64,000 bases of DNA, taken from the IMG/VR virus record IMGVR_UViG_3300028920_000022, positions 310,001 to 374,000 of that record. One strand, 5' to 3'. Below the pieces are notes generated by a model, which was not told where the DNA came from, ran no database searches, and saw nothing but the letters and a program-made list of their open reading frames with translations. Below, in pieces: positions 7,834 to 34,010 of the stretch (within the stretch, counting starts at the first letter, position 1; every line of letters starts with the position of its first letter). The position numbers were made by a program, and so were the translations under genes.

Positions 7834-9000
7834 ATGAAGATCAAAATTCAACAGTTTTTATTTGGGAAAAACCATTCTTGGGCAGTTGTTGGACAAAATA
7901 TTGGACGAGCATTATTAAAAAAAGGTCACGAGGTTCATTTTGTATCTACGGATGGCATTAAAGAAAAATTTATCCCAGAAGACTTGAAACCTCATATTAA
8001 AGAAAAACCTCAAGGTTCGTATGATATGCAGATTTCATATACAGCAATGAAGAATTTTCCAGCTTTCCTAAGTAGCGGAGATAAAAATCGTTTTGGTATT
8101 TGGAATTATGAAACTACAATAATTCCTCCAGGTTTTGCGAAATACTATAAATTTACTGATAAGTTTTTGCCTTCTTCAGAATTTGCTGCAAAAATATTTA
8201 TTGATAATGGTGTTCCGTCCGATTATGTGCGCGTTATCCCACACGGAATTAATGTACAAGAATATTTATCTTATGACGTTTATCCATTAAAAACTAAAAA
8301 ACGTTATAAAATATTAGCCAATATTGCTCAACCGCATGTGAGAAAAAACATAGACGGTTTATTTGAATCTTATGGTATGGCTTTTACCCAAGATGATGAT
8401 GTATGTTTGGTGGCAAAAGTGAGCGCTAAAAGACTTGCCCCCACCCCACAAATAACCGCTAGAACTAGACGCGGCGCCAGGAAACAACAAGCTAAACAAC
8501 AGCTTGATGACAATAGAACTCGTGGTTTTGAAGTAGATTTCTTTGACATTTATAATAAATTTTGTAAAAAATACCCAAAACATGCTGAAGTAGAAATAAT
8601 AAACGAATTTGTGCCCAGCATGGTTTCTATTTATAACGCTTGTGATATCGTTTATTCAGTGACTCATGCCGAATGTTTCTGGCTTCCCGGTTTGGAAGGA
8701 ATGGCTACTAACAACTTGGTTATTGCTCCAAATTGGGGAGGACAATTGGAATACATGAATGAGGATAATTCTTTGTTGATTGCAGGAAAAGAAGGTAGAG
8801 CACCAAAGAAAATGCAATATTGGGTTCCTTCACCTTATGCTGTTACGTTTTTGCCAGATTTGGATGATTCTGTTGCCAAATTGCAAATGGCAGTAGGAAA
8901 CTATGAGAACTTAATGAAAAAGTTTAAACCAGGAATGAAAGAACAACTGGAAAGATTAACTTGGGAAAATGTTGCTGGAAAGATTTTGGACCTCACATGA
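7834..9000 (+). CDS. Glycosyltransferase, GT4-like (GT-B fold)
   Basis: RKNIDGLF and ECFWLPGLEGMA (E-x7-E motif), VIAPNWGGQLEY. Confidence 0.85.
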   Translation: MKIKIQQFLFGKNHSWAVVGQNIGRALLKKGHEVHFVSTDGIKEKFIPEDLKPHIKEKPQGSYDMQISYTAMKNFPAFLSSGDKNRFGIWNYETTIIPPGFAKYYKFTDKFLPSSEFAAKIFIDNGVPSDYVRVIPHGINVQEYLSYDVYPLKTKKRYKILANIAQPHVRKNIDGLFESYGMAFTQDDDVCLVAKVSAKRLAPTPQITARTRRGARKQQAKQQLDDNRTRGFEVDFFDIYNKFCKKYPKHAEVEIINEFVPSMVSIYNACDIVYSVTHAECFWLPGLEGMATNNLVIAPNWGGQLEYMNEDNSLLIAGKEGRAPKKMQYWVPSPYAVTFLPDLDDSVAKLQMAVGNYENLMKKFKPGMKEQLERLTWENVAGKILDLT

Positions 9001-9716
9001 AACTGTCTATTGTAATACCTGTACACAATAATTTTAACTTTACCAAGGCGTGCATAAACGATCTGCGTAGATTACCAAAAGATCACGAAATTATTATTGT
9101 GGATAATGGATCTAGCAAACCAGACAAGAAGAGAAAAATGATTACGGATCGAACTGCACCATATGTTTCTATGCTAGCTAAAGAAATGGAAAATTTGGTG
9201 TACATCAGGAATGATGAGAATCTGGGGTTTGCCAAGGCATCCAATCAGGGCTATGCGGCATCACAAGGAGAGTTTGTGATGTTTTTGAATAACGATATTC
9301 GAGTCAAAAGCGATCATGAAACCTGGACACAACCGATTATGGCGGCTGCTGAGGATGGCTCTCTTGTTGGTCCAACTGGGGGTCTGTTGGACGAGAACTT
9401 AAAATTCCTGAGAGAAGAAGATAAACTTATTGATTCTAAATATTTCTATATGTGTGCTTGGAATTTGACCGCTAAAAAAGAAACGTGGGAAAAACTTAAG
9501 GTGGATGATTGTGTTGGACCGTTTATAGAAGACTGGGGGTCCTATTTTGAAGATACTGATTTGTCATTTAGAGCTAAAGAACTAAATATTTCATTTAAAA
9601 TACTACCCGCCCCTGTTTTACATTTTGGTCGGATGACAGGAAAGCAGCTAGGCTTGCAACAACTATATGCAGAAGCACATACAAAATTCGTTAACAAGTG
9701 GGTTGGTCGCATATGA
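8997..9716 (+). CDS. Glycosyltransferase family 2
   Basis: KLSIVIPVHN, IIIVDNGS, NLGFAKASNQG, FLNND, YFEDTDL. ATG 8997 overlaps the upstream stop (ATGA). Confidence 0.9.
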   Translation: MKLSIVIPVHNNFNFTKACINDLRRLPKDHEIIIVDNGSSKPDKKRKMITDRTAPYVSMLAKEMENLVYIRNDENLGFAKASNQGYAASQGEFVMFLNNDIRVKSDHETWTQPIMAAAEDGSLVGPTGGLLDENLKFLREEDKLIDSKYFYMCAWNLTAKKETWEKLKVDDCVGPFIEDWGSYFEDTDLSFRAKELNISFKILPAPVLHFGRMTGKQLGLQQLYAEAHTKFVNKWVGRI

Positions 9717-10567
9717 AAGTACACATACTTACATTGAACTGGAATGGAAAGCATTATCTTTCTGAGTTATCCAAACAGCTCGGTTGGGAAACCGGATTTT
9801 GTTGGGAGGATGGTAAGATAAAAGAGGATTGGGATTATCCTGTTTGGCATATTAGGGACAACGGTTCCAAAGACGGTTCTATAGATGAGATCAATCGTTG
9901 GCAGCTTATGAGTGACTGTAGGATTTCGGCGAAGGTATATGATATTGGACACAACCGAGATAGTTTTGCTAAGGGCATGAATTACCTATTTGATCAAGCA
10001 AACCCGGCGGATGATGATTTGGTTTATTTGTTGAATAACGATGTTTCTTTTACTTGTCAGGGAAAGCCGGTTTTGGAAACAATGTGGAATTTACAGAAGA
10101 AAACCAAAGCAGGAGTGGTGGGTGTTCGTTTACTTTACAATAATACTGATAAGCTACAGCATGCTGGAGTAATTTTTAGTCACAGGTATAACGATCTACC
10201 TTTTCATTTCAGACCAGGAGAGAAGTCTGACGCTAATGCTAAGAAAAACAGGTATTTTCAAGTGGTAACTGCAGCTTTATGTTTGGTCAATCCTATAAGT
10301 TGGCGAAGAGTTGGTGGTTTTGATGAGAGGTATTCGTGGGCATTTGACGATGTTGACTTAAATCTAAAAATAGGACAAACAGAAAAAATTGCCTACTGTG
10401 GGGAAACATTTGCCTATCATGAAGAAAGTGCATCATTAAAAAAGAACCCAGCGCATAAGCTATTTATGAATCAAAACGTTAGGATTTTGAGAGAAAAGTG
10501 GGCTGGTAAATATAAAATAGATCATGATAGATATCTTAAAGATCCTAATTATAACATAATAAAGTAA
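9713..10567 (+). CDS. Glycosyltransferase family 2
   Basis: TLNWNG, RDNGSKDGS, LLNNDV, LQHAGV, GGFDERY, DDVDL. Confidence 0.9.
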   Translation: MKVHILTLNWNGKHYLSELSKQLGWETGFCWEDGKIKEDWDYPVWHIRDNGSKDGSIDEINRWQLMSDCRISAKVYDIGHNRDSFAKGMNYLFDQANPADDDLVYLLNNDVSFTCQGKPVLETMWNLQKKTKAGVVGVRLLYNNTDKLQHAGVIFSHRYNDLPFHFRPGEKSDANAKKNRYFQVVTAALCLVNPISWRRVGGFDERYSWAFDDVDLNLKIGQTEKIAYCGETFAYHEESASLKKNPAHKLFMNQNVRILREKWAGKYKIDHDRYLKDPNYNIIK

Positions 10568-11523
10568 TGCCAAAAACTATAAACACGAAATATTTTCCAT
10601 TTGCACCAGGATTACCATATAAAATCAAAAATGGAAGATATGTTATTCCTACTATGGATTATTCTTATTGGCAAAAAGCTTTAGATTGTGAAGAAATAGT
10701 TGTAGCAGCTTATAAAGGTTTATTTGAATCTTTGTTTTCTTTATCTATATTCGAAGCAATAAATTATGTGTTTCCCGGAAAAACACTATACTGGTCAGGT
10801 AATACAGAGTTTAATCAATTGGTTTATTTAAATGGTCTGGGATCTTCTGCTTATTTTTTAAATCAAGAGCAGCTTGAACAATATCCGGTTCCAATATTTT
10901 TTGATGCAGAAGGTAGAACTTATTTTAATTGTTTGAATAATTATATTGATGTTAAAACTTATCAAGGAGAATTTAGATATCAAGACCGAAAACCGGCAGC
11001 TGAACAGTTGTTTCGTAACGCTTTGGTAGATTGGTCTATTCAATATTTGCCTAAATGGCGGCATTTGGCAGAACCTCCGGATTTAAAAGAATGGTCAATA
11101 GCACATCATTTTAGGGCAAACAGATCATTCGTGTTGTTTGTGGAAGGTTTATCTGCCCATGAACCTTCAGGTTTAAACTGGTCAATCGCAGATCTTCGGT
11201 CTTTTTCTGCCATGCTCAGATCTAGCCTATTACCTTTTGTGGTTTTAACTCAGCGCCCTCAGAAATATGCAGGGCTCAATGTCTACCTGCCCCCATTCGA
11301 ATTAAATACAGCCCTGTATCTAATTTCTAAAGCGCATTCTGTGTTGTCTCCGGATATGGACTGGTTATTAGCCGCTATGTTGATGGAAAAATCAGTCGTG
11401 GGAAATTCCCAAAAGGGTATATTTGATTTGGAAAAAAATAAACGATATTTAAAGGTGGATGGTAAAATATGTTTTTTTAAAGACATTACTCCACTTCAAG
11501 CCTTTGGAGCCGTCAAGATATGA
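10567..11523 (+). CDS. Hypothetical protein in glycosylation cluster (possible degenerate GT-B/GT9-like)
   Basis: 318-aa ORF coupled on both sides; only weak resemblance to GT9 C-terminal features. Confidence 0.45.
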   Translation: MPKTINTKYFPFAPGLPYKIKNGRYVIPTMDYSYWQKALDCEEIVVAAYKGLFESLFSLSIFEAINYVFPGKTLYWSGNTEFNQLVYLNGLGSSAYFLNQEQLEQYPVPIFFDAEGRTYFNCLNNYIDVKTYQGEFRYQDRKPAAEQLFRNALVDWSIQYLPKWRHLAEPPDLKEWSIAHHFRANRSFVLFVEGLSAHEPSGLNWSIADLRSFSAMLRSSLLPFVVLTQRPQKYAGLNVYLPPFELNTALYLISKAHSVLSPDMDWLLAAMLMEKSVVGNSQKGIFDLEKNKRYLKVDGKICFFKDITPLQAFGAVKI

Positions 11524-12320
11524 TTTATGCTTTAACATTAACATGGAATAATTGTGAAAAATTGCAAAACCTTTATAATTCTTTAATTGAGGTTAGAAAA
11601 TTTACAGATTTAAAATGGTTTGTGCGGGATAATAATTCACAAGATGAAACTGAGGAATTTGCGAAAACAATGAATCCTGAGTTTGTGTATTACTATAAAT
11701 ACAAAAACAATGATGAAAGTTTTTCGCAAGGTAATAATTTTCTTTTTAATAAAGCAAAAGAAGCGGGGTTAGGCGGGGATGATTTTATTTTATTGTTAAA
11801 TGATGATATTATTTTTAAAAACCCTGAATCTTTAAAAAATATGTTATCTTTAATGACGGAAAGAGTGGCAATAGTAGGAACTAGATTATTATTTCCGGAT
11901 GGGCATTTGCAACATGCTGGGGTGGTGTTTGTAGAAAATGATAAAGGTAGATTTCCACACAATTACAGATCTGGAGAACCAGATGATTCTATTGCCCAAA
12001 TGAATAGGGAATTTCAGGCAGTAACCGGAGCCTGTATGCTAATTAGGGCAAAATATATACATTCTGTTTTACTGGACACGAATTATATTTGGGGATACGA
12101 AGATGTTGATCTTGCCTTACGCATGGTTGCAAAAAAGAAACGGGTTTTATATTGCGGAAATACGCACATCATACATGATGAAAGCTCGTCACTGAATAAA
12201 AACCCACAAAACAAAAAATTCTTCTTTAAAAATCTAGCTTATTTTAATCGACAGTGGGCTGGTAAATTTGATGTGGATATAGAAAAGTATCGAAAAAACC
12301 AATTATATAGGGCTCTATGA
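11520..12320 (+). CDS. Glycosyltransferase family 2 (paralog of 9713-10567)
   Basis: RDNNSQD, LLLNDD, LQHAGV, AVTGACML, YEDVDL. Confidence 0.9.
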   Translation: MIYALTLTWNNCEKLQNLYNSLIEVRKFTDLKWFVRDNNSQDETEEFAKTMNPEFVYYYKYKNNDESFSQGNNFLFNKAKEAGLGGDDFILLLNDDIIFKNPESLKNMLSLMTERVAIVGTRLLFPDGHLQHAGVVFVENDKGRFPHNYRSGEPDDSIAQMNREFQAVTGACMLIRAKYIHSVLLDTNYIWGYEDVDLALRMVAKKKRVLYCGNTHIIHDESSSLNKNPQNKKFFFKNLAYFNRQWAGKFDVDIEKYRKNQLYRAL

Positions 12321-13105
12321 CAGACACAACAATAATGATGGTAACTTTTAATCGCTTAGAATTAACCAAAGATACGTTTAAATTATCATTAAATACTACT
12401 GGTAAAAAGTTTAATTTAGTAGTGGTGGACAATGGTTCAACAGATGGGACCCAAGAATGGTTAAAAAATAAGGAATTTGATTGTCCTTGTTTGGCAAGTT
12501 TGACGTTGTTATTGCTACCGGAGAATAGAGGTATTGCTTATGGCAGAAATGCGGCGTTGAAAGCCGCCAAGGAAAAATACCCTGAAACAAAGTATTTTTG
12601 TACATTAGATAACGATATTGGCATACGAAACGATTGGTTAGTTGATTGTTGTGATGTTGTGGATGAGGTTCCGCGGGTAGGTATGTGTGGTGTTAACCTG
12701 GAAGGAAACACATATCCCAGAACAAATGTAAAAATTAAAGGGAGATCATTAACAATTCAGGTGAAACCTAGAGGAAATTTGGGGGCAGTGTGTACTGTAT
12801 TTACTAAAGAAACGCAAGAAAAAATTGGCTATTTTTGTGAGGAATATAAAATGTATGGTCACGAAGATGCGGATTATGGGTTTCGCATTCGAATGTTAGG
12901 GTTGGGTTTAGTTTATTTGAACGAGCCTGGGGTAGATTTATGTGCCGTTCATAAAGGCATTGATGAGGGAGAATACAGAGAATTTAAAAACAAGTTATTT
13001 AAGGAAAACCTAGGAGCTTTTCAAAAGAATGCGGCTAGTTATGCACGCAAGACCAAGCCCATATATGTAGACTTTTCTGAGGATATTTCGGCATTTATGG
13101 GGTAA
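12317..13105 (+). CDS. Glycosyltransferase family 2
   Basis: VTFNR, VVVDNGSTDGT, NRGIAYGRN, TLDND, YGHEDADY. Confidence 0.9.
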   Translation: MTDTTIMMVTFNRLELTKDTFKLSLNTTGKKFNLVVVDNGSTDGTQEWLKNKEFDCPCLASLTLLLLPENRGIAYGRNAALKAAKEKYPETKYFCTLDNDIGIRNDWLVDCCDVVDEVPRVGMCGVNLEGNTYPRTNVKIKGRSLTIQVKPRGNLGAVCTVFTKETQEKIGYFCEEYKMYGHEDADYGFRIRMLGLGLVYLNEPGVDLCAVHKGIDEGEYREFKNKLFKENLGAFQKNAASYARKTKPIYVDFSEDISAFMG

Positions 13106-25472: not shown

Positions 25473-26088
25473 ATTACAGTTTGTTCAACCAATTTTAGAT
25501 ATTTCTCCATCGATTGCTATCGTTGGATCAAGTGGGAATCTGTGTAATCATAAATATGGAAAAATTATTGATCAGTTTCAGGATGTTATTAGATTTAATC
25601 GTGCTCCAACAAAAAATTATGAAGAAATAGTTGGACATAAAACTACTCTTCGTGTAGCTAATAATCATGTTTTTATTAATCTTGCTCCATCACTAAAAGG
25701 ATTTACTGATCAGCCGCCAGATTTTATTAGGAATCTTCGTAATAGTAGAATTTTGTACATGGGTCCGAGTATGGAACAAGAAAATAAAGAAAAGCATACC
25801 CATGCAAGTAATGAGTTGTTTGTGTTTAAATTTGAAAGTTTGGGAGATTTAAAACGCGCTGTTGGATTTGTTTCGCCTCGTCCTCCCAGCGTAGGGTGTA
25901 TAATGATTTGTTTATGTGTGATAGCGAACATAAAACCATATTTATTTGGATTCGATTTAAATGTAAATGATTCATCTAGAACGCATTATTGGGAAGATAG
26001 ACCAAGCTTAAGCCCATGTCATAAAATAGATTATGAGAAGAGGTTTTTAAACAAATTAGCAAAAGCGGGGAAAATAAAAATTAAATGA
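25465..26088 (+). CDS. GT29 sialyltransferase-like glycosyltransferase
   Basis: Sialylmotif L (IAIVGSSGNL..YGKIID..VIRFNRAP..VGHKTTLR), motif S (PSVG..C..LFGF), HYW, and VS-like H-x4-E (HKIDYE). Confidence 0.8.
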   Translation: MSRLQFVQPILDISPSIAIVGSSGNLCNHKYGKIIDQFQDVIRFNRAPTKNYEEIVGHKTTLRVANNHVFINLAPSLKGFTDQPPDFIRNLRNSRILYMGPSMEQENKEKHTHASNELFVFKFESLGDLKRAVGFVSPRPPSVGCIMICLCVIANIKPYLFGFDLNVNDSSRTHYWEDRPSLSPCHKIDYEKRFLNKLAKAGKIKIK

Positions 26089-27047: not shown

Positions 27048-27063
27048 TATTTTGCTGTTTAGA

Positions 27064-28023
27064 ATGTATGAGAAAATGTATAATAGAAATATTAGAATGT
27101 ATGATGAGCCACACGCTCCTGTTTTTATCAGCAAAAATAAATGCAAACATAAGAGTGTAATTGCTATTCCGCCATCTTATTATAAAAATGAATGCCTTGA
27201 CGTTCAGGGTGTTTTAAAATATATACATTATTTAGTTGAATGCGGTGCTACAACGCTAATGACTACTGCAGGCACATCACAATTTAATCTATTAACAACA
27301 AATGAAATTCATATATTTAATAAAGTGGTGGCAACAGCCAAATGCTCAAAGATATTTGGAATACCTCCTATTTCTTCAAATGAATCTGTTAAGTTTGTGC
27401 GACGGGCAAAAGAATATATTGGCAAATCAAATCTTATGGTTTTGTATCCAGATAGGTTTTATGATTATGGGTCTATATATTCCCATATTGCAAAAATTAG
27501 GGAGGCGTCTTTATATCCAGTGTATTTACACGCCATGCCAATGCGTAAAGGTACTGGTGGAGAATGGAACTTTACTTCTGATATAATATCAAGTTTATTT
27601 GAAAAAAAACTGATATGTGGAATAAAAGAAGAACATAGTAATCTTCAAGAGTCATATAATTTTATTAGAAATTTGCCCCCGAATTTAGACGTGATCGTTG
27701 CTGGTGGTAGCATGAGACGTCATCAGTTTTTAAAAACGGCCGGAGCTAATTCATTTTTGTCTGGAATAGGAAATTTATTTCCACAAATAGAAATCAATTA
27801 TTGTAACGAAATAGATAGTGGGCGTTTTGGTGACAGTCAAATAGCTTTAGAGTCGAAATTGTTCGATGTCTTTTTAAAATATGGGTGGCACCCAAGTTTA
27901 AGAGTAGCCTTGGCTCATTTGGGCTTATTGAGTCATTATAATCGTAATCCGTGGCCTAAATTAAGCGGTGCTGCGATTGATGAAATTAAAAATGTAATAT
28001 CCGAGGTCGTAAATGAAAAATAA
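27064..28023 (+). CDS. DapA/NanA-family (DHDPS-like) aldolase/lyase; start uncertain (27001, 27064 or 27097)
   Basis: MTTAGTSQFNLL, GIKEE Schiff-base Lys region, GANSFLSG. Confidence 0.65.
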   Translation: MYEKMYNRNIRMYDEPHAPVFISKNKCKHKSVIAIPPSYYKNECLDVQGVLKYIHYLVECGATTLMTTAGTSQFNLLTTNEIHIFNKVVATAKCSKIFGIPPISSNESVKFVRRAKEYIGKSNLMVLYPDRFYDYGSIYSHIAKIREASLYPVYLHAMPMRKGTGGEWNFTSDIISSLFEKKLICGIKEEHSNLQESYNFIRNLPPNLDVIVAGGSMRRHQFLKTAGANSFLSGIGNLFPQIEINYCNEIDSGRFGDSQIALESKLFDVFLKYGWHPSLRVALAHLGLLSHYNRNPWPKLSGAAIDEIKNVISEVVNEK

Positions 28024-28789
28024 AGTGTGGATTTTGGGTCCCTGTAGTTTAGAGGGTAGAGATTTATTTATAAACACATTATCAGCAATTGAACCAATTA
28101 TGCGTGGAAAACAATGGTATATGAAAGCTAGTTTTGATAAGGCAAACAGAACATCTCTGTATGGCGGTAGAGGTCCGGGATTAGAAGAGTCACAAAAAGT
28201 TTGGAAAGAAGCCCACGAACTTTTTCCACACGTTAAATTTATAACTGACGTTCATGAAGTACATCAGGTAGAAAAGCTGGTAGGATATGTAGATGTTGTA
28301 CAAACGCCAGCCTTTTTGTGCCGACAAACAGATCTTATCGTTGAATGTGCGAAGCATTTTCAAGCCATCAATATTAAAAAGGGACAATGGATAGGACCTA
28401 ACAATCTTATCAAATCTGTGGATAAAGTAAAAGAAACAAACCCAAATTGCGAAGCATGGATTTGTGATCGCGGATCTAATTTTGGATATCATGATTTGTT
28501 CGTTAATTTTGGAATTGTTGACGAATTAAAAGAATATTATGATAAGATTATTTTGGACTGTACGCATTCTACCCAACGGTCAAGAAAAGTACATGGAAAA
28601 CAGGGTGATAGAGTTTTGGCAGAACGATATTTTGTGTCTGCTGATGTTTTTAATTATGATGGCGTTTTTGCAGAAGTTCATCCAAACCCGCCTGAATCTG
28701 TTTCTGACGCTGATTGTGTTTTAGATTTGTTTAGATTAAAAATGTTAGTGCAAAAAGCAGATGCCGTTGGGAAGGTGGTTTGTGAATAA
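28013..28789 (+). CDS. kdsA: 3-deoxy-D-manno-octulosonate 8-phosphate synthase
   Basis: GPCSLE, KASFDKANRTS, TDVHE, PAFLCRQTDL, NIKKGQ, RGSNFGY, DCTHS, EVHPNP..SDA. Confidence 0.9.
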   Translation: MKNKVWILGPCSLEGRDLFINTLSAIEPIMRGKQWYMKASFDKANRTSLYGGRGPGLEESQKVWKEAHELFPHVKFITDVHEVHQVEKLVGYVDVVQTPAFLCRQTDLIVECAKHFQAINIKKGQWIGPNNLIKSVDKVKETNPNCEAWICDRGSNFGYHDLFVNFGIVDELKEYYDKIILDCTHSTQRSRKVHGKQGDRVLAERYFVSADVFNYDGVFAEVHPNPPESVSDADCVLDLFRLKMLVQKADAVGKVVCE

Positions 28790-29450
28790 ATTAGCTGTAA
28801 TCCCGGCAAGAGCAGGTTCAACTCGTCTAAAAAATAAAAATATATATCCATTAGGAGGTAAACCTTTAATAAGATGGGTTACTGAAGCAGTCGTTAATTC
28901 TGGGTGTTTTGATAAAATATTGGTTTCTACTGATGGAGATAAAATATTCGATGCCGTAAAGGATTTACCGGTAGAAAGGCATGTTAGACCGGCTAGTTTA
29001 GCAACTACAAAATCTACAGTTTTAAACGCTATGTTGGATTTAATTGAACATAGTAATGTAGAATATGATGTTTTTTCATATTTTTTGCCAACCTGTCCAT
29101 TTATTAATTGCCAAGATATACAAAATGGTATCAGACGAATAGATAAGTCTGATTTTGTAATAAGTATGACCGAGTTTTCTGAAACAATTCAGTTAGCGTG
29201 TTTAATTAATAATAGCAACGTTATTCCAGTTTTTGATAATTTAGAAATTGGCGCAACAAATAGCAAGTTTATTAAAAAGTACTACAAACCTTCAGGTGCA
29301 TTTTATATTGGTAAATGGGATAAAATTTTAGAATATAAAAATTTTTTTAGTGGAAATGTTCAGGCTGTTATTGTCCCAAAAGAACGCTCAATTGACATAA
29401 ATAACCACTATGATCTTTTATATGCCGAGAGTGTGTTAAAATTACGTTAA
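28782..29450 (+). CDS. CMP-ulosonic acid synthetase (NeuA/KdsB cytidylyltransferase family)
   Basis: IPARAGSTRLKNKN, LGGKPLI, VSTD, PTCPF, SIDIN. GTG start overlapping the kdsA end. Confidence 0.88.
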   Translation: MNKLAVIPARAGSTRLKNKNIYPLGGKPLIRWVTEAVVNSGCFDKILVSTDGDKIFDAVKDLPVERHVRPASLATTKSTVLNAMLDLIEHSNVEYDVFSYFLPTCPFINCQDIQNGIRRIDKSDFVISMTEFSETIQLACLINNSNVIPVFDNLEIGATNSKFIKKYYKPSGAFYIGKWDKILEYKNFFSGNVQAVIVPKERSIDINNHYDLLYAESVLKLR

Positions 29451-29458: not shown

Positions 29459-30541
29459 GTGATGATTCCCGTTTATAAACCCTATCTTCCCAAACATATA
29501 TTACGATATGCGCATGATGCCTTAGGTTCCGGCTGGCTGTCTAGAGGTAAGTATAATGCACTAGCCTCTGAAAAACTTCAAGAAATTTTGAGAGTAAAAC
29601 ATGTGCTGCTGACTAGTAACGGAACTACTGCCGGGCACCTTGTCGCAATAGCTTTAAAAGATTGCTTTGGTTATAATGAAATAATTATGCCGAATAACGT
29701 TTACGTCGCTGCGTGGAATGTTTACAAATACGAAAATATCAAAATTAATATCGTGGACGCAAATATAAAAACTTGGAATTTCGATTATAAATTGTTAGAT
29801 AAAGCAATACGGAAAAATACAGATTGTGCAGTTGGTGTTGTCCATAATCTAGGGAATATCGTAAATGTCCCAAACTTAAAACAACAATATCCGAATACCA
29901 TGTTTGTTGAAGATGCATGTGAAGGGTTTTTAGGAGAGTATTCCGGAAAACCAGTTGGAAGTGAATCGCTTTCTTTTGTTTCTTTTTTTGGTAATAAAAA
30001 TATCACCTCCGGCGAAGGCGGGGCGGTTTTAATTAATGATACGGATATATACGAATATTTGAATTGTAAACATGGTCAGGGACAACATTTTGATGATGAG
30101 CGTTTTGTGCATAGAATGTTGGGTTATAATTATCGTATGACCAATGTGCAAGCTGCTTTATTGTGTGGACAGTTGGAATGTTTGGACCAAATTAAAGAAA
30201 ACAAGAAAAGAGTTTTTGATACCTACTATAAACATCTTGGCTCTGAATTTGTTTTGCAGGAAACCGATCCTAATACCGTTTCTGCTAATTGGATGTTAGG
30301 TATAAGAGTTTCCGGTTCAAACTATAAAAATGCAGAAAGTCTATTTTCGAGTCGTGGTATAGAAATAAGACCAATGTTCTGTGATGTTGGTTTGCATGGA
30401 CATTTTGGCGGAATTTCTACTTTCAATAATGCCTATCTTTTGCGCCGGGAATGTATTGTGCTGCCAAGTTATCCAGAGTTAACCGAAGACGAAATAAAAT
30501 ATATTGTTAAAACTCTAAAAGAATATAAAGAGAACCTATGA
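29459..30541 (+). CDS. DegT/DnrJ/EryC1/StrS aminotransferase (perosamine synthase-like)
   Basis: SNGTTA, VEDACE, SFFGNKNITSGEGG, GYNYRMTNVQAA. Confidence 0.9.
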   Translation: MMIPVYKPYLPKHILRYAHDALGSGWLSRGKYNALASEKLQEILRVKHVLLTSNGTTAGHLVAIALKDCFGYNEIIMPNNVYVAAWNVYKYENIKINIVDANIKTWNFDYKLLDKAIRKNTDCAVGVVHNLGNIVNVPNLKQQYPNTMFVEDACEGFLGEYSGKPVGSESLSFVSFFGNKNITSGEGGAVLINDTDIYEYLNCKHGQGQHFDDERFVHRMLGYNYRMTNVQAALLCGQLECLDQIKENKKRVFDTYYKHLGSEFVLQETDPNTVSANWMLGIRVSGSNYKNAESLFSSRGIEIRPMFCDVGLHGHFGGISTFNNAYLLRRECIVLPSYPELTEDEIKYIVKTLKEYKENL

Positions 30542-31515
30542 AAGCATGTTTGACTGGGATTACGGGACAGACCGGGTCTTATTTGGCAGAATTGTTGCTA
30601 GAAAAAGGCTACGATGTCTATGGACTGGTACGTAGAACTAGCTCTTTTAGTACAGGACGTATAGATCATATCTATGATAAATTGCACCTTACTTATGGTG
30701 ACTTGGCGGATTATTCCTCCATCTCTTCTTGGGTGGGAGATATAAAACCGGATTTGCTATTTAACATGGCGGCTCAAAGCCATGTTAAAGTCAGCTTCGA
30801 TATTCCGGAATATACAGCCGATGTAACTGGTACTAGCGTAATTAGAGTTTTGGAAGCTATTAGAAAAAATAGCCCCAAAACAAGGTTTCTTACGGCCAGC
30901 ACGTCAGAGTTGTTCGGTAGTAGCCCTCCGCCTCAAAATGAACAAACTCCCTTTCACCCTCGCTCCCCATACGCCGTAGCTAAATTGGCGGGATTTTGGG
31001 CAACTATAAATTATAGGGAAGCATATAATCTTTTCGCTACTAATGCTATTATGTTTAATACCGAGTCGGTGAGACGTGGAGAAACTTTTGTAACCAGAAA
31101 AATTACCAGAGCAGCTACTCGTATCAAACTTGGTCTGCAAGATAAACTGGTTCTAGGTAATATCTCTGCTAAACGAGATTGGAATCATAACAAAGATACC
31201 GTCAGAGGTATGCTCATGGCTATTACCGCCAACGAACCAGATGATTATGTGATTGCTTCCGGCGAAATGCACTCTGTTCAGGAATTCGTAGAGTTGGTAT
31301 TCTCTAAGCTAGATTTAGATTGGGAGAAATACGTGGAAATAGATGAACGCTATTATCGCCCATCTGAAGTTGATGCTCTTTGTGGTGATTCTACCAAGAT
31401 TCGTAATAAATTGGGTTGGGAACCAGAATTTTCTTTTAATGATCTAGTAGAGGAAATGGTCCAGCACGATCTCGCCCTGGCTGGTAAAGAAAAGCTTTTG
31501 AAGGAAGCGGTATGA
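30538..31515 (+). CDS. gmd: GDP-mannose 4,6-dehydratase
   Basis: TGITGQTGSYLAELLL, AAQSHVKVSF, PRSPYAVAK, RGETFVTRKIT, YYRPSEVD. Confidence 0.95.
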   Translation: MKACLTGITGQTGSYLAELLLEKGYDVYGLVRRTSSFSTGRIDHIYDKLHLTYGDLADYSSISSWVGDIKPDLLFNMAAQSHVKVSFDIPEYTADVTGTSVIRVLEAIRKNSPKTRFLTASTSELFGSSPPPQNEQTPFHPRSPYAVAKLAGFWATINYREAYNLFATNAIMFNTESVRRGETFVTRKITRAATRIKLGLQDKLVLGNISAKRDWNHNKDTVRGMLMAITANEPDDYVIASGEMHSVQEFVELVFSKLDLDWEKYVEIDERYYRPSEVDALCGDSTKIRNKLGWEPEFSFNDLVEEMVQHDLALAGKEKLLKEAV

Positions 31516-32477
31516 AAATTCTAGTCACAGGTAGTTCCGGGTTTCTAGGACATCATGTTCTGGAAGAATTTTATAACAAATCTAAAGAAACCATTATTTC
31601 TCCAGGAAGTATAAATTGCGATCTAACAAACCCTAATGATGTAGATAATTATTTTAAAAATACTAGGTGTGATTGTATTCTACATTTGGCTGCTGTTTGT
31701 GGCGGAATCTTGGCGAATCGCAATAGCCCTGCAGATTTTTTAGTTAAGAATTTGCAAATGGGAATAAATATATTCGAAGCTGCAAGAAAAAATGATATTA
31801 AATACGTGTATACTCTGGGTAGCGTGTGTGGTTATCCAAAGTATTGCCAAGTTCCTTTTAAGGAGGATAACCTGTGGAATGGTTATCCTGAAGGGACTAA
31901 TGCCCCGTATGGGCACGCAAAACGTACCCTTCTAATGCTTCAAAACACTTACCGAAAACAATACGGTATTAAAGGAACACACCTAATACCGGTGAACCTG
32001 TTTGGAACCCAAGACCATTTTGATCTAATCAATAGCCACGTAATTCCTGCATTAATTCGCAAGTTTCTTACTGCTGTAGATGAACCTGCTCCATCAGTAG
32101 AATTATGGGGTAGCGGGGAAGTCAGTAGGGAGTTTCTGTATGCTCCCGATTGTGCGGAAGCAATAGTTAAAACCGTTCTTATGAAGCTAGATTATCCAGA
32201 GCCCATTAATCTAGGGACAGGACGTGATATATCTATAAGGGAATTGGCAGAAACCATTGCCAAACTATGTGGATATAAAGGAGATATTGTCTTCAATACC
32301 AATATGCCAGATGGGCAACCTAAACGCAGATTAGATGTATCTAGGGCAAAAGAAGTTCTGGGTTGGGAAGCTAAAACTTCTCTGCTGGAAGGGTTAACCC
32401 ATACAATCACGTGGTACGAAGATAATAGGCACTTGACAGAGGATTCAAATGACAAGAACAACCAAAAAAGCTCGTAA
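31512..32477 (+). CDS. fcl: GDP-L-fucose synthase
   Basis: HLAAVCGGILAN, YGHAKR, SHVIPALIRK, WGSG..SREFLY, PDGQPKR. Confidence 0.9.
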   Translation: MKILVTGSSGFLGHHVLEEFYNKSKETIISPGSINCDLTNPNDVDNYFKNTRCDCILHLAAVCGGILANRNSPADFLVKNLQMGINIFEAARKNDIKYVYTLGSVCGYPKYCQVPFKEDNLWNGYPEGTNAPYGHAKRTLLMLQNTYRKQYGIKGTHLIPVNLFGTQDHFDLINSHVIPALIRKFLTAVDEPAPSVELWGSGEVSREFLYAPDCAEAIVKTVLMKLDYPEPINLGTGRDISIRELAETIAKLCGYKGDIVFNTNMPDGQPKRRLDVSRAKEVLGWEAKTSLLEGLTHTITWYEDNRHLTEDSNDKNNQKSS

Positions 32478-33033
32478 GACCACCAAGAAAACTAGCAAGA
32501 AAACTAGCAAGAAAACTAGCAAGAAAACTAGTAAGAAAACTGTAAAGAAAGCAAATGGCACCAAGGTAAGACGTGTTACTCCTGACAACACTATTAATGT
32601 TTCAGAAATAGCCTCTACATTGGGATATGATGAGTTGGCAAAACAGCTAACTGTCGAAAAACCAAAACCTGTAGTTACCGATGTTACCAGGAATGGCAAG
32701 AACGTTTATAAGCGGTATGACAATGCAAAGGTAGAGGAATCTTCGGATGAGTTTTTGCGTAAGTTTTCTGACATGAGTGAGACAGAGTTTGCTGCTTGGA
32801 TTTTGGGTAGAGAAGCTGCTGAAAAGATCGTTCAGGCTGAGGAAACCTTAGCCAAGCTGACCAAAGAATATTGGCAGGCAAAACGTAGGCTTATTTGTGC
32901 CACTCAGGCGCTTAATGCAGCTTATGCTAAACTAGAGGAAAAAGGCACTTTAGTCACTTCTAGTGAATTGTCCAAGAGCGAAGCCCGAACTGTTGTAGCG
33001 AAAGCATTAGAGGAAGAACTCTGGAATAGGTAA
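32449..33033 (+). CDS. Hypothetical protein with histone H1-like Lys-rich N-terminal tail and predicted coiled coil
   Basis: KKARKTTKKTSKKTSKKTSKKTSKKTVKK N-terminus. Confidence 0.6.
   Translation: MTRTTKKARKTTKKTSKKTSKKTSKKTSKKTVKKANGTKVRRVTPDNTINVSEIASTLGYDELAKQLTVEKPKPVVTDVTRNGKNVYKRYDNAKVEESSDEFLRKFSDMSETEFAAWILGREAAEKIVQAEETLAKLTKEYWQAKRRLICATQALNAAYAKLEEKGTLVTSSELSKSEARTVVAKALEEELWNR
32485..32541 (+). repeat. 12-bp tandem repeat (AAGAAAACTAGC), about 4.75 copies
   Basis: Three perfect units, one ending T, and one partial; encodes KKTS. Confidence 0.95.
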
Positions 33034-34010
33034 TGGGTAGGACCAAAATTTTATGCACAGGTAGTGGCGGGTTTATATTTTCTAATTTTGTTCGTCAAAT
33101 ATTAAAATTTAACCCACCATCTGTAAAAGCCAAATATGAAGTTGTTGGTGTGGATAAGTGTACTTTACCTAAAGTATTGAATACTATTTATACCAACAGA
33201 GGTCATAAGTTTCATATTGGTGATGTAACAGATAGACATTTTATGAATATTATATTTGAGCTAGAACGCCCAGATATAGTAATTCACGCTGCTGCCGAAA
33301 CTTTTGTTGATAATGCAATTGAAGATGCTAACAAATTTGTTAAAACAAATGTAGAGGGAACACAAGTTATAATAGACATGTGTTTAAAATGGAATGTAAA
33401 AAGATGTGTGTACATCTCTACTGACGAAGTATATGGGCATCTGGTTAGTGAAGATTTATCGTCTTGGACGGAACATTCTATTCTTAATCCACGCAACCCA
33501 TATTCTGCCACCAAGGCAGCTGGCGAGTTGCTAATAAGAGCTGCACATGAAACTCATGGATTGCCCTATAATATTACTCGATCTTGCAACAATTATGGTC
33601 CCAGACAACCAGTTCGTAATCTAATCCCTAAAATTATTGCCAACATTCATCATGAGAGACCGGTGCCTATTTTTGGCCAAGGTATGCAGATACGTGATTG
33701 GATCCATGTTCAGGACTGTTGTGCTGCAATAATTAAAATAATAGAAGATGCTCCACTTAATGAAATATATAACATATCTGCAAAACAGGAATATACGAAT
33801 ATAGAGGTATTTCATGAGATTTGCAATATATTGGGTCGAGGGCATGATCTATTAAAGTTTGTTGAAGACAGAAGGGGACATGATTTTCGATACTCAATAA
33901 ACAACCAAAAAATGTTAGATTTAGGTTGGGAACCCAAATTCAAGTTTAAAGCTGGGTTAGAGCATACGGTCGATTGGTACATGAAAAACACTTGGTTTTT
34001 GAAGGATTAA
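33033..34010 (+). CDS. rfbB: dTDP-glucose 4,6-dehydratase
   Basis: TGSGGFI, HAAAETFVD, ISTDEVYG, PYSATKA, NNYGPRQ, RDWIHVQD, DRRGHDFRY. Confidence 0.9.
   Translation: MGRTKILCTGSGGFIFSNFVRQILKFNPPSVKAKYEVVGVDKCTLPKVLNTIYTNRGHKFHIGDVTDRHFMNIIFELERPDIVIHAAAETFVDNAIEDANKFVKTNVEGTQVIIDMCLKWNVKRCVYISTDEVYGHLVSEDLSSWTEHSILNPRNPYSATKAAGELLIRAAHETHGLPYNITRSCNNYGPRQPVRNLIPKIIANIHHERPVPIFGQGMQIRDWIHVQDCCAAIIKIIEDAPLNEIYNISAKQEYTNIEVFHEICNILGRGHDLLKFVEDRRGHDFRYSINNQKMLDLGWEPKFKFKAGLEHTVDWYMKNTWFLKD

What the first reader, a model, noticed from the sequence alone, without database searches (positions are those of the whole stretch)
7834..34010. About 26-kb phage glycan biosynthesis island with no membrane or export machinery
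Seen: about 30 coupled genes, including a dozen or more recognisable or putative glycosyltransferases, nucleotide-sugar enzymes and tailoring enzymes (formyl, acetyl, methyl, sulfo, kinase-like). They sit between virion genes and phage replication genes. None looks like a polytopic membrane protein: no Wzx, Wzy, ABC transporter, initiating undecaprenyl-P transferase or GtrABC. Known: O-antigen/capsule loci and serotype-conversion cassettes need such components, whereas virion glycosylation is documented in giant eukaryotic viruses and some mycobacteriophages. Inference: the acceptor is cytoplasmic, most plausibly virion proteins, forming a complex glycan coat. DNA hypermodification is an alternative.
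Basis: partly seen in the sequence, partly recalled or inferred. Interest (0 to 1): 0.85.

Follow-up and report, generated by a model that had tools for sequence, protein, structure and literature searches.

The report
Huge-phage sugar-coat gene island
An uncultivated phage with a 458,729-base contig carries a conserved 26-kb block of 32 soluble sugar-building enzymes, including a sialyltransferase-type enzyme, that probably coats either the phage's own fibre proteins or the host's outer surface; sequence alone cannot say which.

Summary
Window 7834-34010 contains 32 tightly packed same-strand ORFs. Eleven are supported glycosyltransferases and one more is weak. There are three nucleotide-sugar routes (GDP-6-deoxyhexose, dTDP-6-deoxyhexose, CMP-ulosonic acid), plus formyl-, acetyl-, methyl- and a weak sulfo-transferase. 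No polytopic membrane protein occurs anywhere in the 64 kb. I found no kinase-like gene.

The island is not a chimera. A related phage, assembled independently from several samples, has the same order: giant fibre-like proteins, island, TubZ and replication genes. 27 of the 32 ORFs are orthologous.

The new element is a recurrent module: a minimal GT29 (sialyltransferase-family) enzyme, a Kdo-8-P-synthase-like or NeuB enzyme, a small HAD phosphatase, a DHDPS-like aldolase and a NeuA/PseF-like cytidylyltransferase. It also occurs in other huge phages and viral contigs.

LPS-core or lipooligosaccharide extension also needs no cluster-encoded membrane proteins, and the published reading of jumbo-phage glycan clusters is host-surface remodelling. 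Points favouring virion-protein glycosylation: a further GT2 lies between tail-fibre-like genes, some families are shared with giant viruses, and one bacterial GT29 homologue sits in a flagellin locus. I put virion glycosylation at about 0.45 and host envelope at about 0.35.

The parts
7834..9000 (+). GT4-type glycosyltransferase (GT-B)
   Evidence: Pfam Glyco_transf_4 E 2e-7. Ortholog 82% identical in relative L016.
8961..9716 (+). GT2 glycosyltransferase
   Evidence: Pfam Glycos_transf_2 E 1.5e-18. Ortholog 68% identical.
9698..10567 (+). GT2-like glycosyltransferase, paralogue of 11520
   Evidence: BLASTP to 11520-12320: 34% identity, E 4e-41. Ortholog 61-65% identical.
10567..11523 (+). 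GT-B glycosyltransferase with GT9 (heptosyltransferase)-like fold; no Pfam family
   Evidence: AF2 pLDDT 92.3. Foldseek WaaC/WaaF E 7e-9, TM 0.52-0.56.
11520..13105 (+). Two GT2 glycosyltransferases (11520-12320 and 12317-13105)
   Evidence: Pfam Glyco_tranf_2_3 and Glycos_transf_2. Orthologs 70% and 78% identical.
13108..15177 (+). 689-aa protein: unknown beta-rich N-terminal 430 aa plus C-terminal GT-B glycosyltransferase domain
   Evidence: Atlas structural hits to GT4/GT1 families over residues 430-689. No Pfam or PDB sequence hit.
15171..16112 (+). GT-B glycosyltransferase (Glyco_trans_1_2)
   Evidence: Pfam E 2e-13. Ortholog 79% identical.
16070..17397 (+). Two conserved ORFs of 221 aa each (16070-16735 and 16732-17397), function unknown
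   Evidence: No family. Orthologs 72% and 63% identical in the relative.
17394..18140 (+). Possible sulfotransferase (weak)
   Evidence: Pfam Sulfotransfer_3 E 0.0015, N-terminal P-loop only. Sulfotransferase-like genes also lie near GT29 in L004 and L014.
18137..19027 (+). Beta-propeller-like protein of a large family with no Pfam model
   Evidence: 459 representatives. Profile hits designed propeller Tako8 at E 4.5e-14 and WD40 blades. Homologue present in LR756508.
19028..19741 (+). Conserved ORF of 237 aa, function unknown
   Evidence: No family. Ortholog 44% identical in the relative.
19738..20643 (+). GT9-like GT-B glycosyltransferase of a virus-dominated family
   Evidence: Atlas score 0.98 to Uroviricota clusters; TM 0.69 to GT9. 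Homologues in the 636-kb and 735-kb phages LR756504 and LR756501.
20644..20952 (+). DUF4254-like 102-aa protein, always next to the GT9-like gene
   Evidence: Pfam DUF4254 E 7e-5, below cut-off. 67-70% identical in L002 and LR756504.
20915..21400 (+). GNAT acetyltransferase (first gene of the variable tailoring cassette)
   Evidence: Pfam GNAT E 7e-10. No ortholog in the relative.
21397..22221 (+). GT-B glycosyltransferase, GT9/TibC-like fold; family with no Pfam model shared with other huge contigs and Mimiviridae bins
   Evidence: AF2 pLDDT 91.9. Foldseek TibC E 1e-6, WaaF E 7e-5. BFVD Hyperionvirus, Solumvirus and Mimivirus LCMiAC01, TM 0.64-0.73. Homologues on 200-500 kb contigs.
22223..22963 (+). 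Sugar N-formyltransferase
   Evidence: Pfam Formyl_trans_N E 5.5e-28. NCBIfam ArnA-type and sugar formyltransferases.
22960..23769 (+). Possible GT-A glycosyltransferase, conserved just upstream of GT29 in the relative
   Evidence: PHROG beta-1,4-glycosyltransferase E 0.003. 57% ortholog directly upstream of GT29 in L002/L003.
23762..25472 (+). Rest of the variable tailoring cassette: unknown 199-aa ORF (23762) and two methyltransferases (24396; 24855, FkbM type)
   Evidence: Pfam. No orthologs in the relative, which carries a C-methyltransferase and other genes instead.
25465..26088 (+). Minimal (207 aa) GT29 sialyltransferase-family enzyme, predicted CMP-ulosonic acid transferase
   Evidence: Pfam GT29 85.6 bits against a cut-off of 23. 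PDB ST3Gal-I and ST6Gal-I E 1e-10. All four sialyl motifs conserved in 17 homologues.
26085..27047 (+). Methyltransferase fused to a roughly 105-aa HAD-type phosphatase (residues 213-315, DIDET motif)
   Evidence: Pfam methyltransferase. The C-terminal part matches stand-alone 99-116 aa ORFs in L006, L008 and L011.
27001..28023 (+). DHDPS / N-acetylneuraminate-lyase superfamily enzyme with the Schiff-base lysine retained
   Evidence: Pfam DHDPS E 1.7e-11. K209 in 'GIKEE' is invariant in 6 homologues. Co-occurs with the GT29 module in L004, L006, L008, L014 and L017.
28013..28789 (+). 3-deoxy-8-phosphooctulonate (Kdo-8-P) synthase-like enzyme
   Evidence: NCBIfam Kdo8P synthase 226.6 bits against a cut-off of 242. 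83% identical in the relative and 72% in L004.
28761..29450 (+). CMP-ulosonic acid synthetase (NeuA/PseF-like cytidylyltransferase)
   Evidence: Pfam CTP_transf_3 E 3e-25. NCBIfam PseF 125 bits against KdsB 58 bits.
29459..30541 (+). DegT-family sugar aminotransferase
   Evidence: Pfam E 1e-60. 47% identical homologue in LR756504 beside the GT9-like genes.
30538..32477 (+). GDP-mannose 4,6-dehydratase (30538-31515) and GDP-L-fucose-synthase-like reductase/epimerase (31512-32477)
   Evidence: NCBIfam gmd 436 bits (cut-off 415); Fcl 282 bits (cut-off 500).
32449..33033 (+). Conserved 194-aa protein with a Thr/Ser/Lys-repeat N-terminus, function unknown
   Evidence: Sequence. 62% ortholog at the same place in L014.
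33033..34010 (+). dTDP-glucose 4,6-dehydratase-like SDR
   Evidence: NCBIfam 343 bits against a cut-off of 365. 79% ortholog.
57..7748 (+). Left neighbours: giant Laminin_G_3 protein (over 2200 aa, cut by the window edge) and a dockerin/EF-hand protein (split by a frameshift near 5045-5050)
   Evidence: Pfam. Upstream extension. Orthologs of 2217 aa and 974 aa, 76-81% identical, in the same position in L016.
48229..56765 (+). Outside the island: two giant Gly/Ser/Thr-rich tail-fibre-like ORFs (48229-51237 and 52401-56765), a 128-aa ORF (51240-51626), and a GT2-fold glycosyltransferase (51623-52408) whose ends overlap its neighbours by 4 and 8 nt
   Evidence: Weak Phage_T7_tail matches. Shared motifs between the two giant ORFs. 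GT2: Atlas score 0.98, TM 0.74, viral families.

Best explanation
The island is a self-contained, cytoplasmic glycan assembly line carried by a lineage of huge phages.

Shown from sequence:
- It makes its own activated sugars from host GDP-mannose and dTDP-glucose. The predicted products are 6-deoxyhexoses and 4-amino-6-deoxyhexoses that are then N-formylated or N-acetylated.
- It also makes a CMP-activated 2-keto-3-deoxy ulosonic acid (Kdo-like). The route is Kdo-8-P-synthase-like enzyme, then HAD phosphatase, then NeuA/PseF-like cytidylyltransferase. A DHDPS-like aldolase-family enzyme of unknown role accompanies them.
- About a dozen soluble glycosyltransferases (GT2, GT4/GT-B, three GT9-like, one GT29) are encoded alongside.

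Inferred:
- The GTs add sugars one at a time to build a long, non-repeating, methylated and possibly sulfated oligosaccharide. The GT29 enzyme adds the acidic ulosonic acid.
- The acceptor is a phage protein made in the same cytoplasm. The most likely candidates are the giant fibre-like proteins encoded on both sides of the island, so that virions leave the cell with a glycan coat. This is what giant eukaryotic viruses and some mycobacteriophages do.
- The tailoring cassette differs between related phages, so the coat would differ between them.
For: 1. Complete soluble pathway set and 11-12 GTs.
2. No polytopic membrane ORF on the coding strand in the 64-kb window or the relative. The same holds for LR756508 (40 kb), LR756504 (40 kb; one 591-aa ORF there has two hydrophobic segments), L006 and L018; L017 has only one small 3-segment ORF on the non-coding strand. 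The same scan detects 7-TM and 6-TM ORFs in the bacterial-type locus L008.
3. The order 'giant Laminin_G_3 protein, dockerin protein, island, TubZ' is conserved in independently assembled relatives. The giant proteins are 76-81% identical.
4. A further GT2-fold enzyme (51623-52408) overlaps its neighbours in a cluster bounded by two tail-fibre-like ORFs and shares their GC content.
5. The 21397 family matches Mimiviridae-bin proteins at TM 0.64-0.73. The 51623 family is shared with Nucleocytoviricota. Virion glycosylation by virus-encoded enzymes is experimentally established in that group (PMC9614988).
6. The best solved-structure match of 21397 is TibC, a cytoplasmic protein O-heptosyltransferase (weak, TM 0.47).
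7. A bacterial GT29 homologue lies beside two flagellins, FlaG, FliD, FlgK and a TPR protein. Flagellin glycosylation islands are cytoplasmic, free of export genes and use ulosonic acids, including Kdo (10.1101/2020.06.03.131540).
8. Eleven to twelve GTs without a polymerase fit a long non-repeating glycan better than a repeat-unit polysaccharide (inference).
Against: - No acceptor protein or protein-specific initiating GT has been identified.
- The 'virion' status of the giant ORFs rests on composition and weak domain matches only.
- Three GTs have the LPS-core heptosyltransferase fold, next to a DUF4254-like gene.
- The sugars (Kdo-like, 6-deoxyhexoses, formylated amino sugars) are classic LPS or capsule sugars.
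- One bacterial GT29 homologue sits in a locus with multi-TM ORFs, which I read as Wzx/Wzy-like without checking (L008).
- LPS-core or LOS assembly needs no cluster-encoded membrane protein.
- A TubZ-type tubulin next to the island fits the pseudolysogeny scenario in which host-surface change would pay off (PMC7824862).
- About 390 kb of the genome was not examined.
Confidence: 0.45

Rival explanations
1. Host-envelope remodelling. The phage GTs act at the cytoplasmic face of the host inner membrane on lipid A-core (LOS-type extension) or on host Und-PP-linked intermediates. Housekeeping host proteins (MsbA, WecA, Wzx, WaaL) carry out the membrane steps. The altered surface blocks superinfection or grazing during a long or pseudolysogenic infection.
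For: - This is the published interpretation of jumbo-phage and cyanophage glycan clusters (PMC7824862 section 3.4.10; PMC12801897).
- Three GT9 (LPS heptosyltransferase)-like folds are present, together with a DUF4254-like partner.
- The sugars are Kdo-like, GDP-6-deoxyhexose and formylated amino-sugar types.
- The tailoring cassette varies between relatives, as in O-antigen loci.
- L008 shows GT29 in a polysaccharide locus with multi-TM proteins.
- A TubZ-like gene is adjacent.
- From established knowledge, waa core clusters encode no transporter.
Against: - None of the phage-like islands sampled carries any initiating, flipping or ligating protein, whereas bacterial loci usually carry their own.
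- Synthesis at the cytoplasmic face changes only newly made envelope, which is slow for a lytic cycle (inference).
- The island is linked to fibre-like genes, and a separate GT2 sits inside a fibre cluster.
- Some families are shared with giant viruses of eukaryotes, which have no LPS.
- The host is unknown and may not be Gram-negative.
Confidence: 0.35
2. The product is a soluble or secreted glycoconjugate or small-molecule glycoside, for example a glycosylated metabolite, a free oligosaccharide or a glycolipid that is not LPS. It would be made for host takeover or competition.
For: - Many tailoring enzymes (methyl, formyl, acetyl, possibly sulfo) and five ORFs of unknown function plus a beta-propeller of unknown role.
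- Iyer et al. note secondary-metabolite-like sugar clusters in cyanophages (PMC7824862).
Against: - No aglycone-forming enzymes (PKS, NRPS, halogenase, carbamoyltransferase) were detected in the window.
- Eleven to twelve GTs is far more than natural-product glycosylation normally uses (established knowledge).
Confidence: 0.08
3. DNA hypermodification: the sugars are attached to modified bases of the phage DNA.
For: - Phage GTs do glycosylate hydroxymethylated bases, sometimes with several sugars (cited in PMC12619734: Pyle et al. 2024).
- The rest of the genome was not examined.
Against: - No hydroxymethylase or thymidylate-synthase homologue or base-modifying kinase is in the window.
- The GT families (GT2, GT4, GT9-like, GT29) and the formyl, methyl and ulosonic-acid chemistry are those of complex glycans. 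Known DNA glycans are one to a few sugars (established knowledge).
Confidence: 0.03
4. Artefact: the contig is a chimera of phage sequence and a bacterial LPS or capsule locus.
For: GC drops to 0.30-0.33 in the middle of the island, against 0.38-0.44 in the flanks.
Against: - Both junctions (fibre-like genes to island, and island to TubZ) recur in contigs from four other samples (JGI 3300031578 and 3300031669; ENA ERZ27256808 and ERZ27256847). 27 of 32 ORFs are orthologous.
- Strand, packing and gene overlaps are continuous across the borders.
Confidence: 0.01

Closest known systems
Giant-virus glycogene clusters (CroV 38-kb, 34-ORF cluster; Mimivirus clade-specific clusters; chlorovirus PBCV-1 capsid glycosylation), PMC9614988
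   Same: - Virus-encoded nucleotide-sugar pathways, many soluble GTs and methyltransferases in one cluster, with no ER/Golgi or export genes.
- CroV is predicted to make Kdo using a NeuA-like rather than a KdsB-like cytidylyltransferase, as here.
- Some island families have structural homologues in Mimiviridae bins.
   Different: - The host here is a prokaryote and the virus is tailed.
- The Kdo pathway here lacks the arabinose-5-P isomerase and adds a DHDPS-like enzyme and a GT29 transferase.
- Nothing is known experimentally about the product.
'LPS' or cell-wall synthesis and modification clusters of large T4-like cyanophages (P-SSM2, S-SCSM1, S-SCSM2R) and jumbo-phage 'capsular polysaccharide modification systems' (PMC12801897, PMC7824862)
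   Same: - Large lytic phages with 13 or more GTs, NDP-sugar epimerases/dehydratases and KdsA/KdsB.
- Clusters are polymorphic between relatives.
- Function is unproven.
   Different: - Unrelated phage backbone: the only hit among 50,697 phage records was a 25%-identical TubZ match in Bacillus phage G.
- Only S-SCSM2R KdsA matches, at 39%. Among the 50,697 phage records the GT29 hit only the uncultured huge phage LR756508.
- The genes form one contiguous 32-gene block beside fibre-like genes.
Mycobacteriophage virion O-glycosylation (Freeman et al. 2023, cited in PMC12619734)
   Same: Phage-encoded soluble GTs next to structural genes modify virion proteins in the cytoplasm.
   Different: Those systems have one to a few GTs, no sugar-nucleotide pathways and an actinobacterial host, and they are experimentally shown.
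Bacterial flagellin glycosylation islands (Maf or FlmG with Pse, Leg or Kdo)
   Same: - Cytoplasmic protein O-glycosylation with CMP-ulosonic acids, accompanied by methyl and formyl tailoring and no export genes.
- One bacterial GT29 homologue lies in such a locus.
- The Maf GT-A domain resembles GT29 and GT42 (10.1101/2022.03.25.485807).
   Different: - No Maf (MAF_flag10) or FlmG-type TPR transferase is in the island.
- There are many more GTs here.
- The flagellin link rests on one locus only.
Eukaryotic GT29 sialyltransferases and plant GT29 RCKT1 (CMP-Kdo transferase of pectin RG-II; 10.1101/2023.11.15.567147)
   Same: - Sialyl motifs L, S, III (HYWE) and VS (H-x4-E) are all present.
- The gene is paired with a Kdo-type pathway, as for plant RCKT1.
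   Different: - Only 207 aa, with no transmembrane anchor or stem and none of the conserved disulfide cysteines.
- Prokaryotic-virus context.
- Donor and acceptor are untested.
LPS core (waa) assembly by GT9 heptosyltransferases WaaC/WaaF
   Same: Three island proteins have this fold. The enzymes are soluble or peripheral and act without a dedicated exporter.
   Different: - 8-17% sequence identity only.
- No ADP-heptose pathway, WaaA or WaaL in the window.
- The best match of one of them is the protein heptosyltransferase TibC.

Membership tests
CAZy GT29 (sialyltransferase family) | Match to the family model above the curated threshold | tested here: met
   PF00777 85.6 bits against a gathering score of 23, covering profile positions 58-271 of 272. 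ST3Gal-I and ST6Gal-I chains at E 1e-10 to 1e-9.
CAZy GT29 (sialyltransferase family) | Sialyl motifs L, S, III and VS, with the catalytic His of motif VS | tested here: met
   Alignment A1 of 17 homologues. It shows AIVGSSG..G..ID..D.VIRFNRAP (motif L), PS.G...L....I.P.LFGFD (motif S), HYWE (motif III; Y invariant, H conserved in at least 90%), and H186-x4-E191 invariant (motif VS).
CAZy GT29 (sialyltransferase family) | Uses a CMP-activated ulosonic acid donor with inversion | not testable with these tools
   Supported only by gene linkage to a cytidylyltransferase and a synthase in 8 loci.
CMP-Kdo pathway (KdsD, KdsA, KdsC, KdsB) | Kdo-8-P synthase (KdsA) | tested here: inconclusive
   NCBIfam NF003543 226.6 bits, just under the cut-off of 242. 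DAH7P synthase models score far lower.
CMP-Kdo pathway (KdsD, KdsA, KdsC, KdsB) | Arabinose-5-P isomerase (KdsD) | tested here: not met
   No SIS-domain or isomerase hit among the window ORFs. It would have to come from the host.
CMP-Kdo pathway (KdsD, KdsA, KdsC, KdsB) | Sugar-phosphate phosphatase (KdsC-type HAD) | tested here: inconclusive
   A roughly 105-aa HAD-like domain with a D-x-D-x-T motif is fused to the 26085 methyltransferase and conserved in four other modules. It is not a KdsC family member by any model. L018 has a Hydrolase_3 gene instead.
CMP-Kdo pathway (KdsD, KdsA, KdsC, KdsB) | KdsB-type CMP-Kdo synthetase | tested here: not met
   The best model is PseF (125 bits); KdsB models reach at most 58 bits. 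CroV shows the same situation (PMC9614988).
Wzx/Wzy- or ABC-dependent O-antigen or capsule locus | Initiating phosphoglycosyltransferase, flippase, polymerase or ABC transporter in the locus | tested here: not met
   No ORF with two or more hydrophobic segments on the coding strand and no such Pfam family in 64 kb. The positive control L008 shows 7-TM and 6-TM ORFs.
Serotype-conversion cassette (GtrABC, Oac) | Polytopic GtrA/GtrB/Gtr(type) or acyltransferase-3 membrane proteins | tested here: not met
   Same scans as above.
GDP-L-fucose / GDP-6-deoxyhexose pathway | Gmd plus a GDP-4-keto-6-deoxymannose epimerase/reductase | tested here: met
   Gmd TIGR01472 436 bits against a cut-off of 415. 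Fcl NF047922 282 bits, below its cut-off of 500, so the exact product of the second enzyme is open.
Virus-encoded virion glycosylation system (giant viruses, mycobacteriophages) | Virus-encoded GTs genetically linked to structural genes | tested here: inconclusive
   Linkage to giant fibre-like ORFs is conserved and a GT2 lies within a tail-fibre-like gene cluster. None of these ORFs is proven to be structural.
Virus-encoded virion glycosylation system (giant viruses, mycobacteriophages) | Glycan detected on virion proteins | not testable with these tools
   Uncultivated phage known only from metagenomes.
Phage DNA glycosylation | Base hydroxymethylase or other base-activating enzyme together with the GT | tested here: not met
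   None in the window. The other roughly 390 kb of the contig could not be read.

The most novel reading that the evidence does not exclude
Huge phages, like giant eukaryotic viruses, run an autonomous cytoplasmic protein-glycosylation system. It coats their virion fibres with long, lineage-specific, methylated glycans capped by a sialic-acid-like ulosonic acid. The cap would be transferred by a minimal, anchor-less member of the 'eukaryotic' GT29 sialyltransferase family. Parts of this toolkit (GT29, GT9-like families with no Pfam model, GT2) would be shared between huge phages and Nucleocytoviricota. That would make the phage world a reservoir, or even a source, of the GT29 fold.
Probability: 0.3. 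Interest if true: 0.85.

Novelty: new variant of a known kind. Interest (0 to 1): 0.62.

Why it matters
Large glycan clusters in big phages have been listed before, but nobody has tested what they do. This island is one of the largest and best-conserved examples.

- It ties such clusters to huge phages of about 460-735 kb and, by shared protein families, to giant eukaryotic viruses.
- It reveals a compact CMP-ulosonic-acid module built around a 207-aa GT29 enzyme. I found no paper describing this for phages or bacteria.
- If the acceptor is the virion, glycan coats would be a general trait of very large viruses across domains. That would bear on adsorption, grazing, colloidal behaviour and antibody or lectin recognition.
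- If the acceptor is the host envelope, it would be the most elaborate phage-driven surface conversion known.
- In either case the minimal soluble GT29 and its partner enzymes are attractive for enzymology and glycoengineering.

Tried and rejected
- Megablast of 24 kb against 50,697 phage records gave no match. tblastn of the giant ORFs gave no match either.
- PHROGs gave nothing for the nine large flank ORFs. For ten unassigned island ORFs it gave only two marginal hits. Pfam re-run at E up to 5 added nothing credible.
- Sigma-70 promoter and terminator scans across 4-44 kb were no better than shuffles. Operon boundaries and timing therefore could not be inferred.
- No tRNAs were found.
- The GTDB genome scan with a GT29 alignment found only two Opitutales MAGs, after a first alignment was too divergent to use. 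The L013 context was not informative, so the flagellin link rests on one locus (L005).
- An exact-protein look-up of a window-edge ORF failed. Walking by DNA pattern yields only about 5 kb per scan, so the rest of the 458,729-base contig was not surveyed.
- Single-sequence hhalign of 21397 and 19738 against the 10567 family found nothing. Structure prediction was needed.
- No collagen-like Gly-X-Y runs occur in the Gly-rich fibre ORFs.
- Literature searches for the sample ID, for phage with Kdo-8-P synthase as an auxiliary gene, and for GT29 with phage found no paper describing this system. Al-Shayeb et al. 2020 does not mention glycosyl or polysaccharide genes in its main text.
- I considered and rejected the chimera idea and the idea that the 102-aa DUF4254-like ORF is a gene fragment. 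Its orthologs have the same length.

Full report
**Origin and setting.** The window is part of IMGVR_UViG_3300028920_000022, a 458,729-bp viral contig, and window position 1 is about contig position 310,001. All credible genes lie on the + strand. No cultured phage is similar. Megablast of 24 kb found nothing, and the TubZ homologue matched only Bacillus phage G at 25% identity. Downstream of the island lie clear replication and maintenance genes: a TubZ-like tubulin, a UvsW-like helicase, an AAA protein, DnaB, a sigma-like factor, a class II ribonucleotide reductase with an intein, and a methionine aminopeptidase. This is a huge tailed phage.

**The observation.** Thirty-two ORFs fill 7834-34010. 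Twenty-four of the 32 successive junctions overlap and the largest gap is 34 nt.

Pfam and NCBIfam identify these glycosyltransferases:
- GT4 (7834)
- GT2 (8961, 11520, 12317)
- Glyco_trans_1_2 (15171)
- GT29 (25465)

Further work added five more:
- 9698 is a GT2 paralogue.
- The C-terminal third of the 689-aa ORF 13108 has a GT-B fold.
- 19738 has a GT9-like fold and belongs to a virus-dominated family.
- 10567 and 21397 gave confident AlphaFold models (pLDDT 92). Their best solved matches are the heptosyltransferases WaaC/WaaF and TibC/WaaF.

Sugar-nucleotide enzymes are:
- Gmd, above the curated cut-off, and an Fcl-like reductase
- an RmlB-like dehydratase and a DegT aminotransferase
- a Kdo-8-P-synthase-like enzyme, a NeuA/PseF-like cytidylyltransferase and a DHDPS-superfamily enzyme

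Tailoring enzymes are a formyltransferase, a GNAT, three methyltransferases and a weak sulfotransferase candidate. I found no kinase-like gene. Five ORFs remain without an assigned fold or function. A sixth, 18137, belongs to a large beta-propeller-like family with no Pfam model.

A hydropathy scan found no coding-strand ORF with two or more transmembrane-like segments anywhere in the window. The same scan flagged 7-TM and 6-TM ORFs in a bacterial-type control locus.

**Not a chimera; a conserved lineage trait.** Contigs from four other samples carry an orthologous island in the same order (JGI 3300031578 and 3300031669; ENA ERZ27256808 and ERZ27256847). The order is: a 2217-aa Laminin_G_3 protein, a 974-aa dockerin protein, GT4, GT2 and the rest of the island, a Thr/Ser/Lys-repeat protein, the RmlB-like gene, TubZ, helicases, the sigma-like factor and RNR.
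- 27 of the 32 island ORFs have orthologues at 44-86% identity.
- Replication genes are 51-85% identical and the giant left-flank proteins 76-81%.
- Five adjacent tailoring genes (20915-22221 and 23762-25472) have no counterpart. The relative carries a C-methyltransferase, further methyltransferases and an extra epimerase instead.

The glycan is therefore conserved in outline and variable in decoration. The low GC of the island centre (0.30-0.33) is a property of the lineage's island, not an assembly artefact.

**The ulosonic-acid module.**
- *GT29.* The 207-aa GT29 protein keeps all four sialyl motifs. These include HYWE (motif III) and the H-x4-E of motif VS. It matches mammalian ST3Gal and ST6Gal structures at E 1e-10.
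- *Phosphatase.* The ORF 26085 is a methyltransferase fused to a roughly 105-aa HAD-type phosphatase with a DIDET motif. This domain is a stand-alone gene in other loci.
- *Aldolase-family enzyme.* The DHDPS-like protein keeps its Schiff-base lysine in all six homologues compared.
- *Recurrence.* The set recurs in the relative, in a 96-kb phage-like contig (L004), in Tara and other marine-type contigs carrying PhoH or PD-(D/E)XK genes (L006, L017) and in L018 beside a dCMP deaminase. It also recurs in the 484-kb huge phage LR756508, which has five GT29 paralogues. The set is GT29, a small HAD, a synthase (Kdo8PS-like or NeuB), a DHDPS-like enzyme and a NeuA-like cytidylyltransferase.
- *Distribution.* Ninety-three GT29 homologues of about 207 aa exist in metagenomes. 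Only two were found among GTDB species representatives.
- *Precedents.* A plant GT29 member (RCKT1) is the proposed CMP-Kdo transferase for pectin (10.1101/2023.11.15.567147). CroV's predicted Kdo pathway also uses a NeuA-like cytidylyltransferase (PMC9614988).
- *Reading.* I therefore read the module as making and transferring a CMP-activated Kdo-like sugar. The exact sugar and the role of the DHDPS-like enzyme are open.

**Links to other very large viruses.**
- The GT9-like families 19738 and 21397 have no homologue in cultured phages. They do occur in LR756504 (636 kb) and LR756501/LR756503 (735 kb).
- In LR756504 they sit with the DUF4254-like gene (70% identical) and DegT in one block.
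- Many homologues of 21397 lie on contigs of 200-500 kb.
- The closest viral structural relatives of 21397 are proteins of Mimiviridae-type metagenomic bins, at TM 0.64-0.73.
- The separate GT2 at 51623 also belongs to families shared by phages and Nucleocytoviricota.

**What is the acceptor?** This cannot be settled from sequence.

For phage proteins:
- The island is linked in a conserved way to giant, acidic, Ser/Thr-rich fibre-like ORFs.
- A GT2 lies within, and overlaps its neighbours in, a cluster bounded by two tail-fibre-like ORFs.
- Families are shared with giant viruses, whose virion glycosylation is experimentally known (PMC9614988).
- The best PDB match of 21397 is the protein heptosyltransferase TibC, although this is weak.
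- One bacterial GT29 homologue lies in a flagellin locus.
- Every phage-like island sampled lacks polytopic membrane proteins.

For the host envelope:
- The sugar types and three LPS-heptosyltransferase-like folds point this way.
- One bacterial GT29 homologue lies in a locus with multi-TM ORFs, which I read as Wzx/Wzy-like without checking.
- The tailoring cassette is variable, as in O-antigen loci.
- A TubZ gene is adjacent.
- This is the published view of such clusters (PMC7824862, PMC12801897).

I rate virion or phage-protein glycosylation at about 0.45, host-envelope remodelling at about 0.35, another soluble product at about 0.08, DNA hypermodification at about 0.03 and a chimera at about 0.01.

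**Novelty.** Big glycan clusters in large phages and giant viruses are a known kind. The new points are:
- the size and conservation of this one in a roughly 460-kb phage lineage;
- its recurrence in the very largest phages;
- the families it shares with giant viruses;
- the minimal GT29-centred CMP-ulosonate module, for which I found no description.

I therefore class it as a new variant of a known kind, with interest 0.62.

Noticed in passing
window 4813-7748 (break near 5045-5050): The 84-aa ORF 4813-5067 and the 892-aa dockerin/EF-hand ORF 5070-7748 form one 974-aa ORF in the relative. The window has a 1-nt indel (AATTTGATGG against AACTTCGATGG). This is either a real frameshift or an assembly error.
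   Followed up: partly
window 57-4820 and L010 3127-5016: The Laminin_G_3 ORF is cut by the window edge. It runs at least 630 codons further upstream without a stop (the relative's ortholog is 2217 aa). Another ORF of more than 1039 aa precedes it.
   Followed up: partly
window 58273-63386 (and 56762-57685): GC jumps to 0.51-0.58, against 0.30-0.45 elsewhere. The region holds two 43%-identical 850-aa paralogues with Laminin_G_3 domains. The 307-aa ORF 56762-57685 is homologous to their N-termini. They may be fast-evolving or recently acquired receptor-binding proteins.
   Followed up: no
window 41938-45081; L002 17086-19335: The class II ribonucleotide reductase carries an intein with a LAGLIDADG endonuclease. 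In the relative, the Gmd gene of the island also carries an intein, which the window's Gmd lacks.
   Followed up: no
window 32449-33033: A conserved 194-aa protein has an N-terminal (T/S)KK repeat and a helical C-terminus. It lies between the Fcl-like and RmlB-like genes and has a 62% ortholog in the relative. It could be a DNA-binding protein or a Ser/Thr-rich acceptor.
   Followed up: no
window 20644-20952; L019 21493-21798: The 102-aa DUF4254-like protein is 67-70% identical between distantly related huge phages. That is more conserved than its neighbours, and it always sits beside a GT9-like gene. Its function is unknown.
   Followed up: partly
window 18137-19027: This beta-propeller-like protein belongs to a family with 459 representatives at 50% identity. 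Some members are fused into proteins of 500-1200 aa. There is no Pfam model, and His/Asn/Arg/Asp positions are conserved.
   Followed up: partly
window 34641-36011: A TubZ-like tubulin gene lies 631 nt downstream of the island, after two small ORFs. In the relative it directly follows the island's last gene. This is relevant to a possible pseudolysogenic or plasmid-like lifestyle.
   Followed up: no
L004 7130-7492: In another viral-type contig, a 120-aa three-TM PQ-loop (semiSWEET-like) ORF lies just upstream of the GT29 gene. It is the only membrane protein seen beside a phage-type GT29 module.
   Followed up: no
L011 (LR756508.1) 17213-22381: This 484-kb huge phage has five GT29 paralogues, four of them around a NeuB gene. 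A GIY-YIG/LEM-3-like nuclease ORF is inserted between NeuB and the paralogues.
   Followed up: partly
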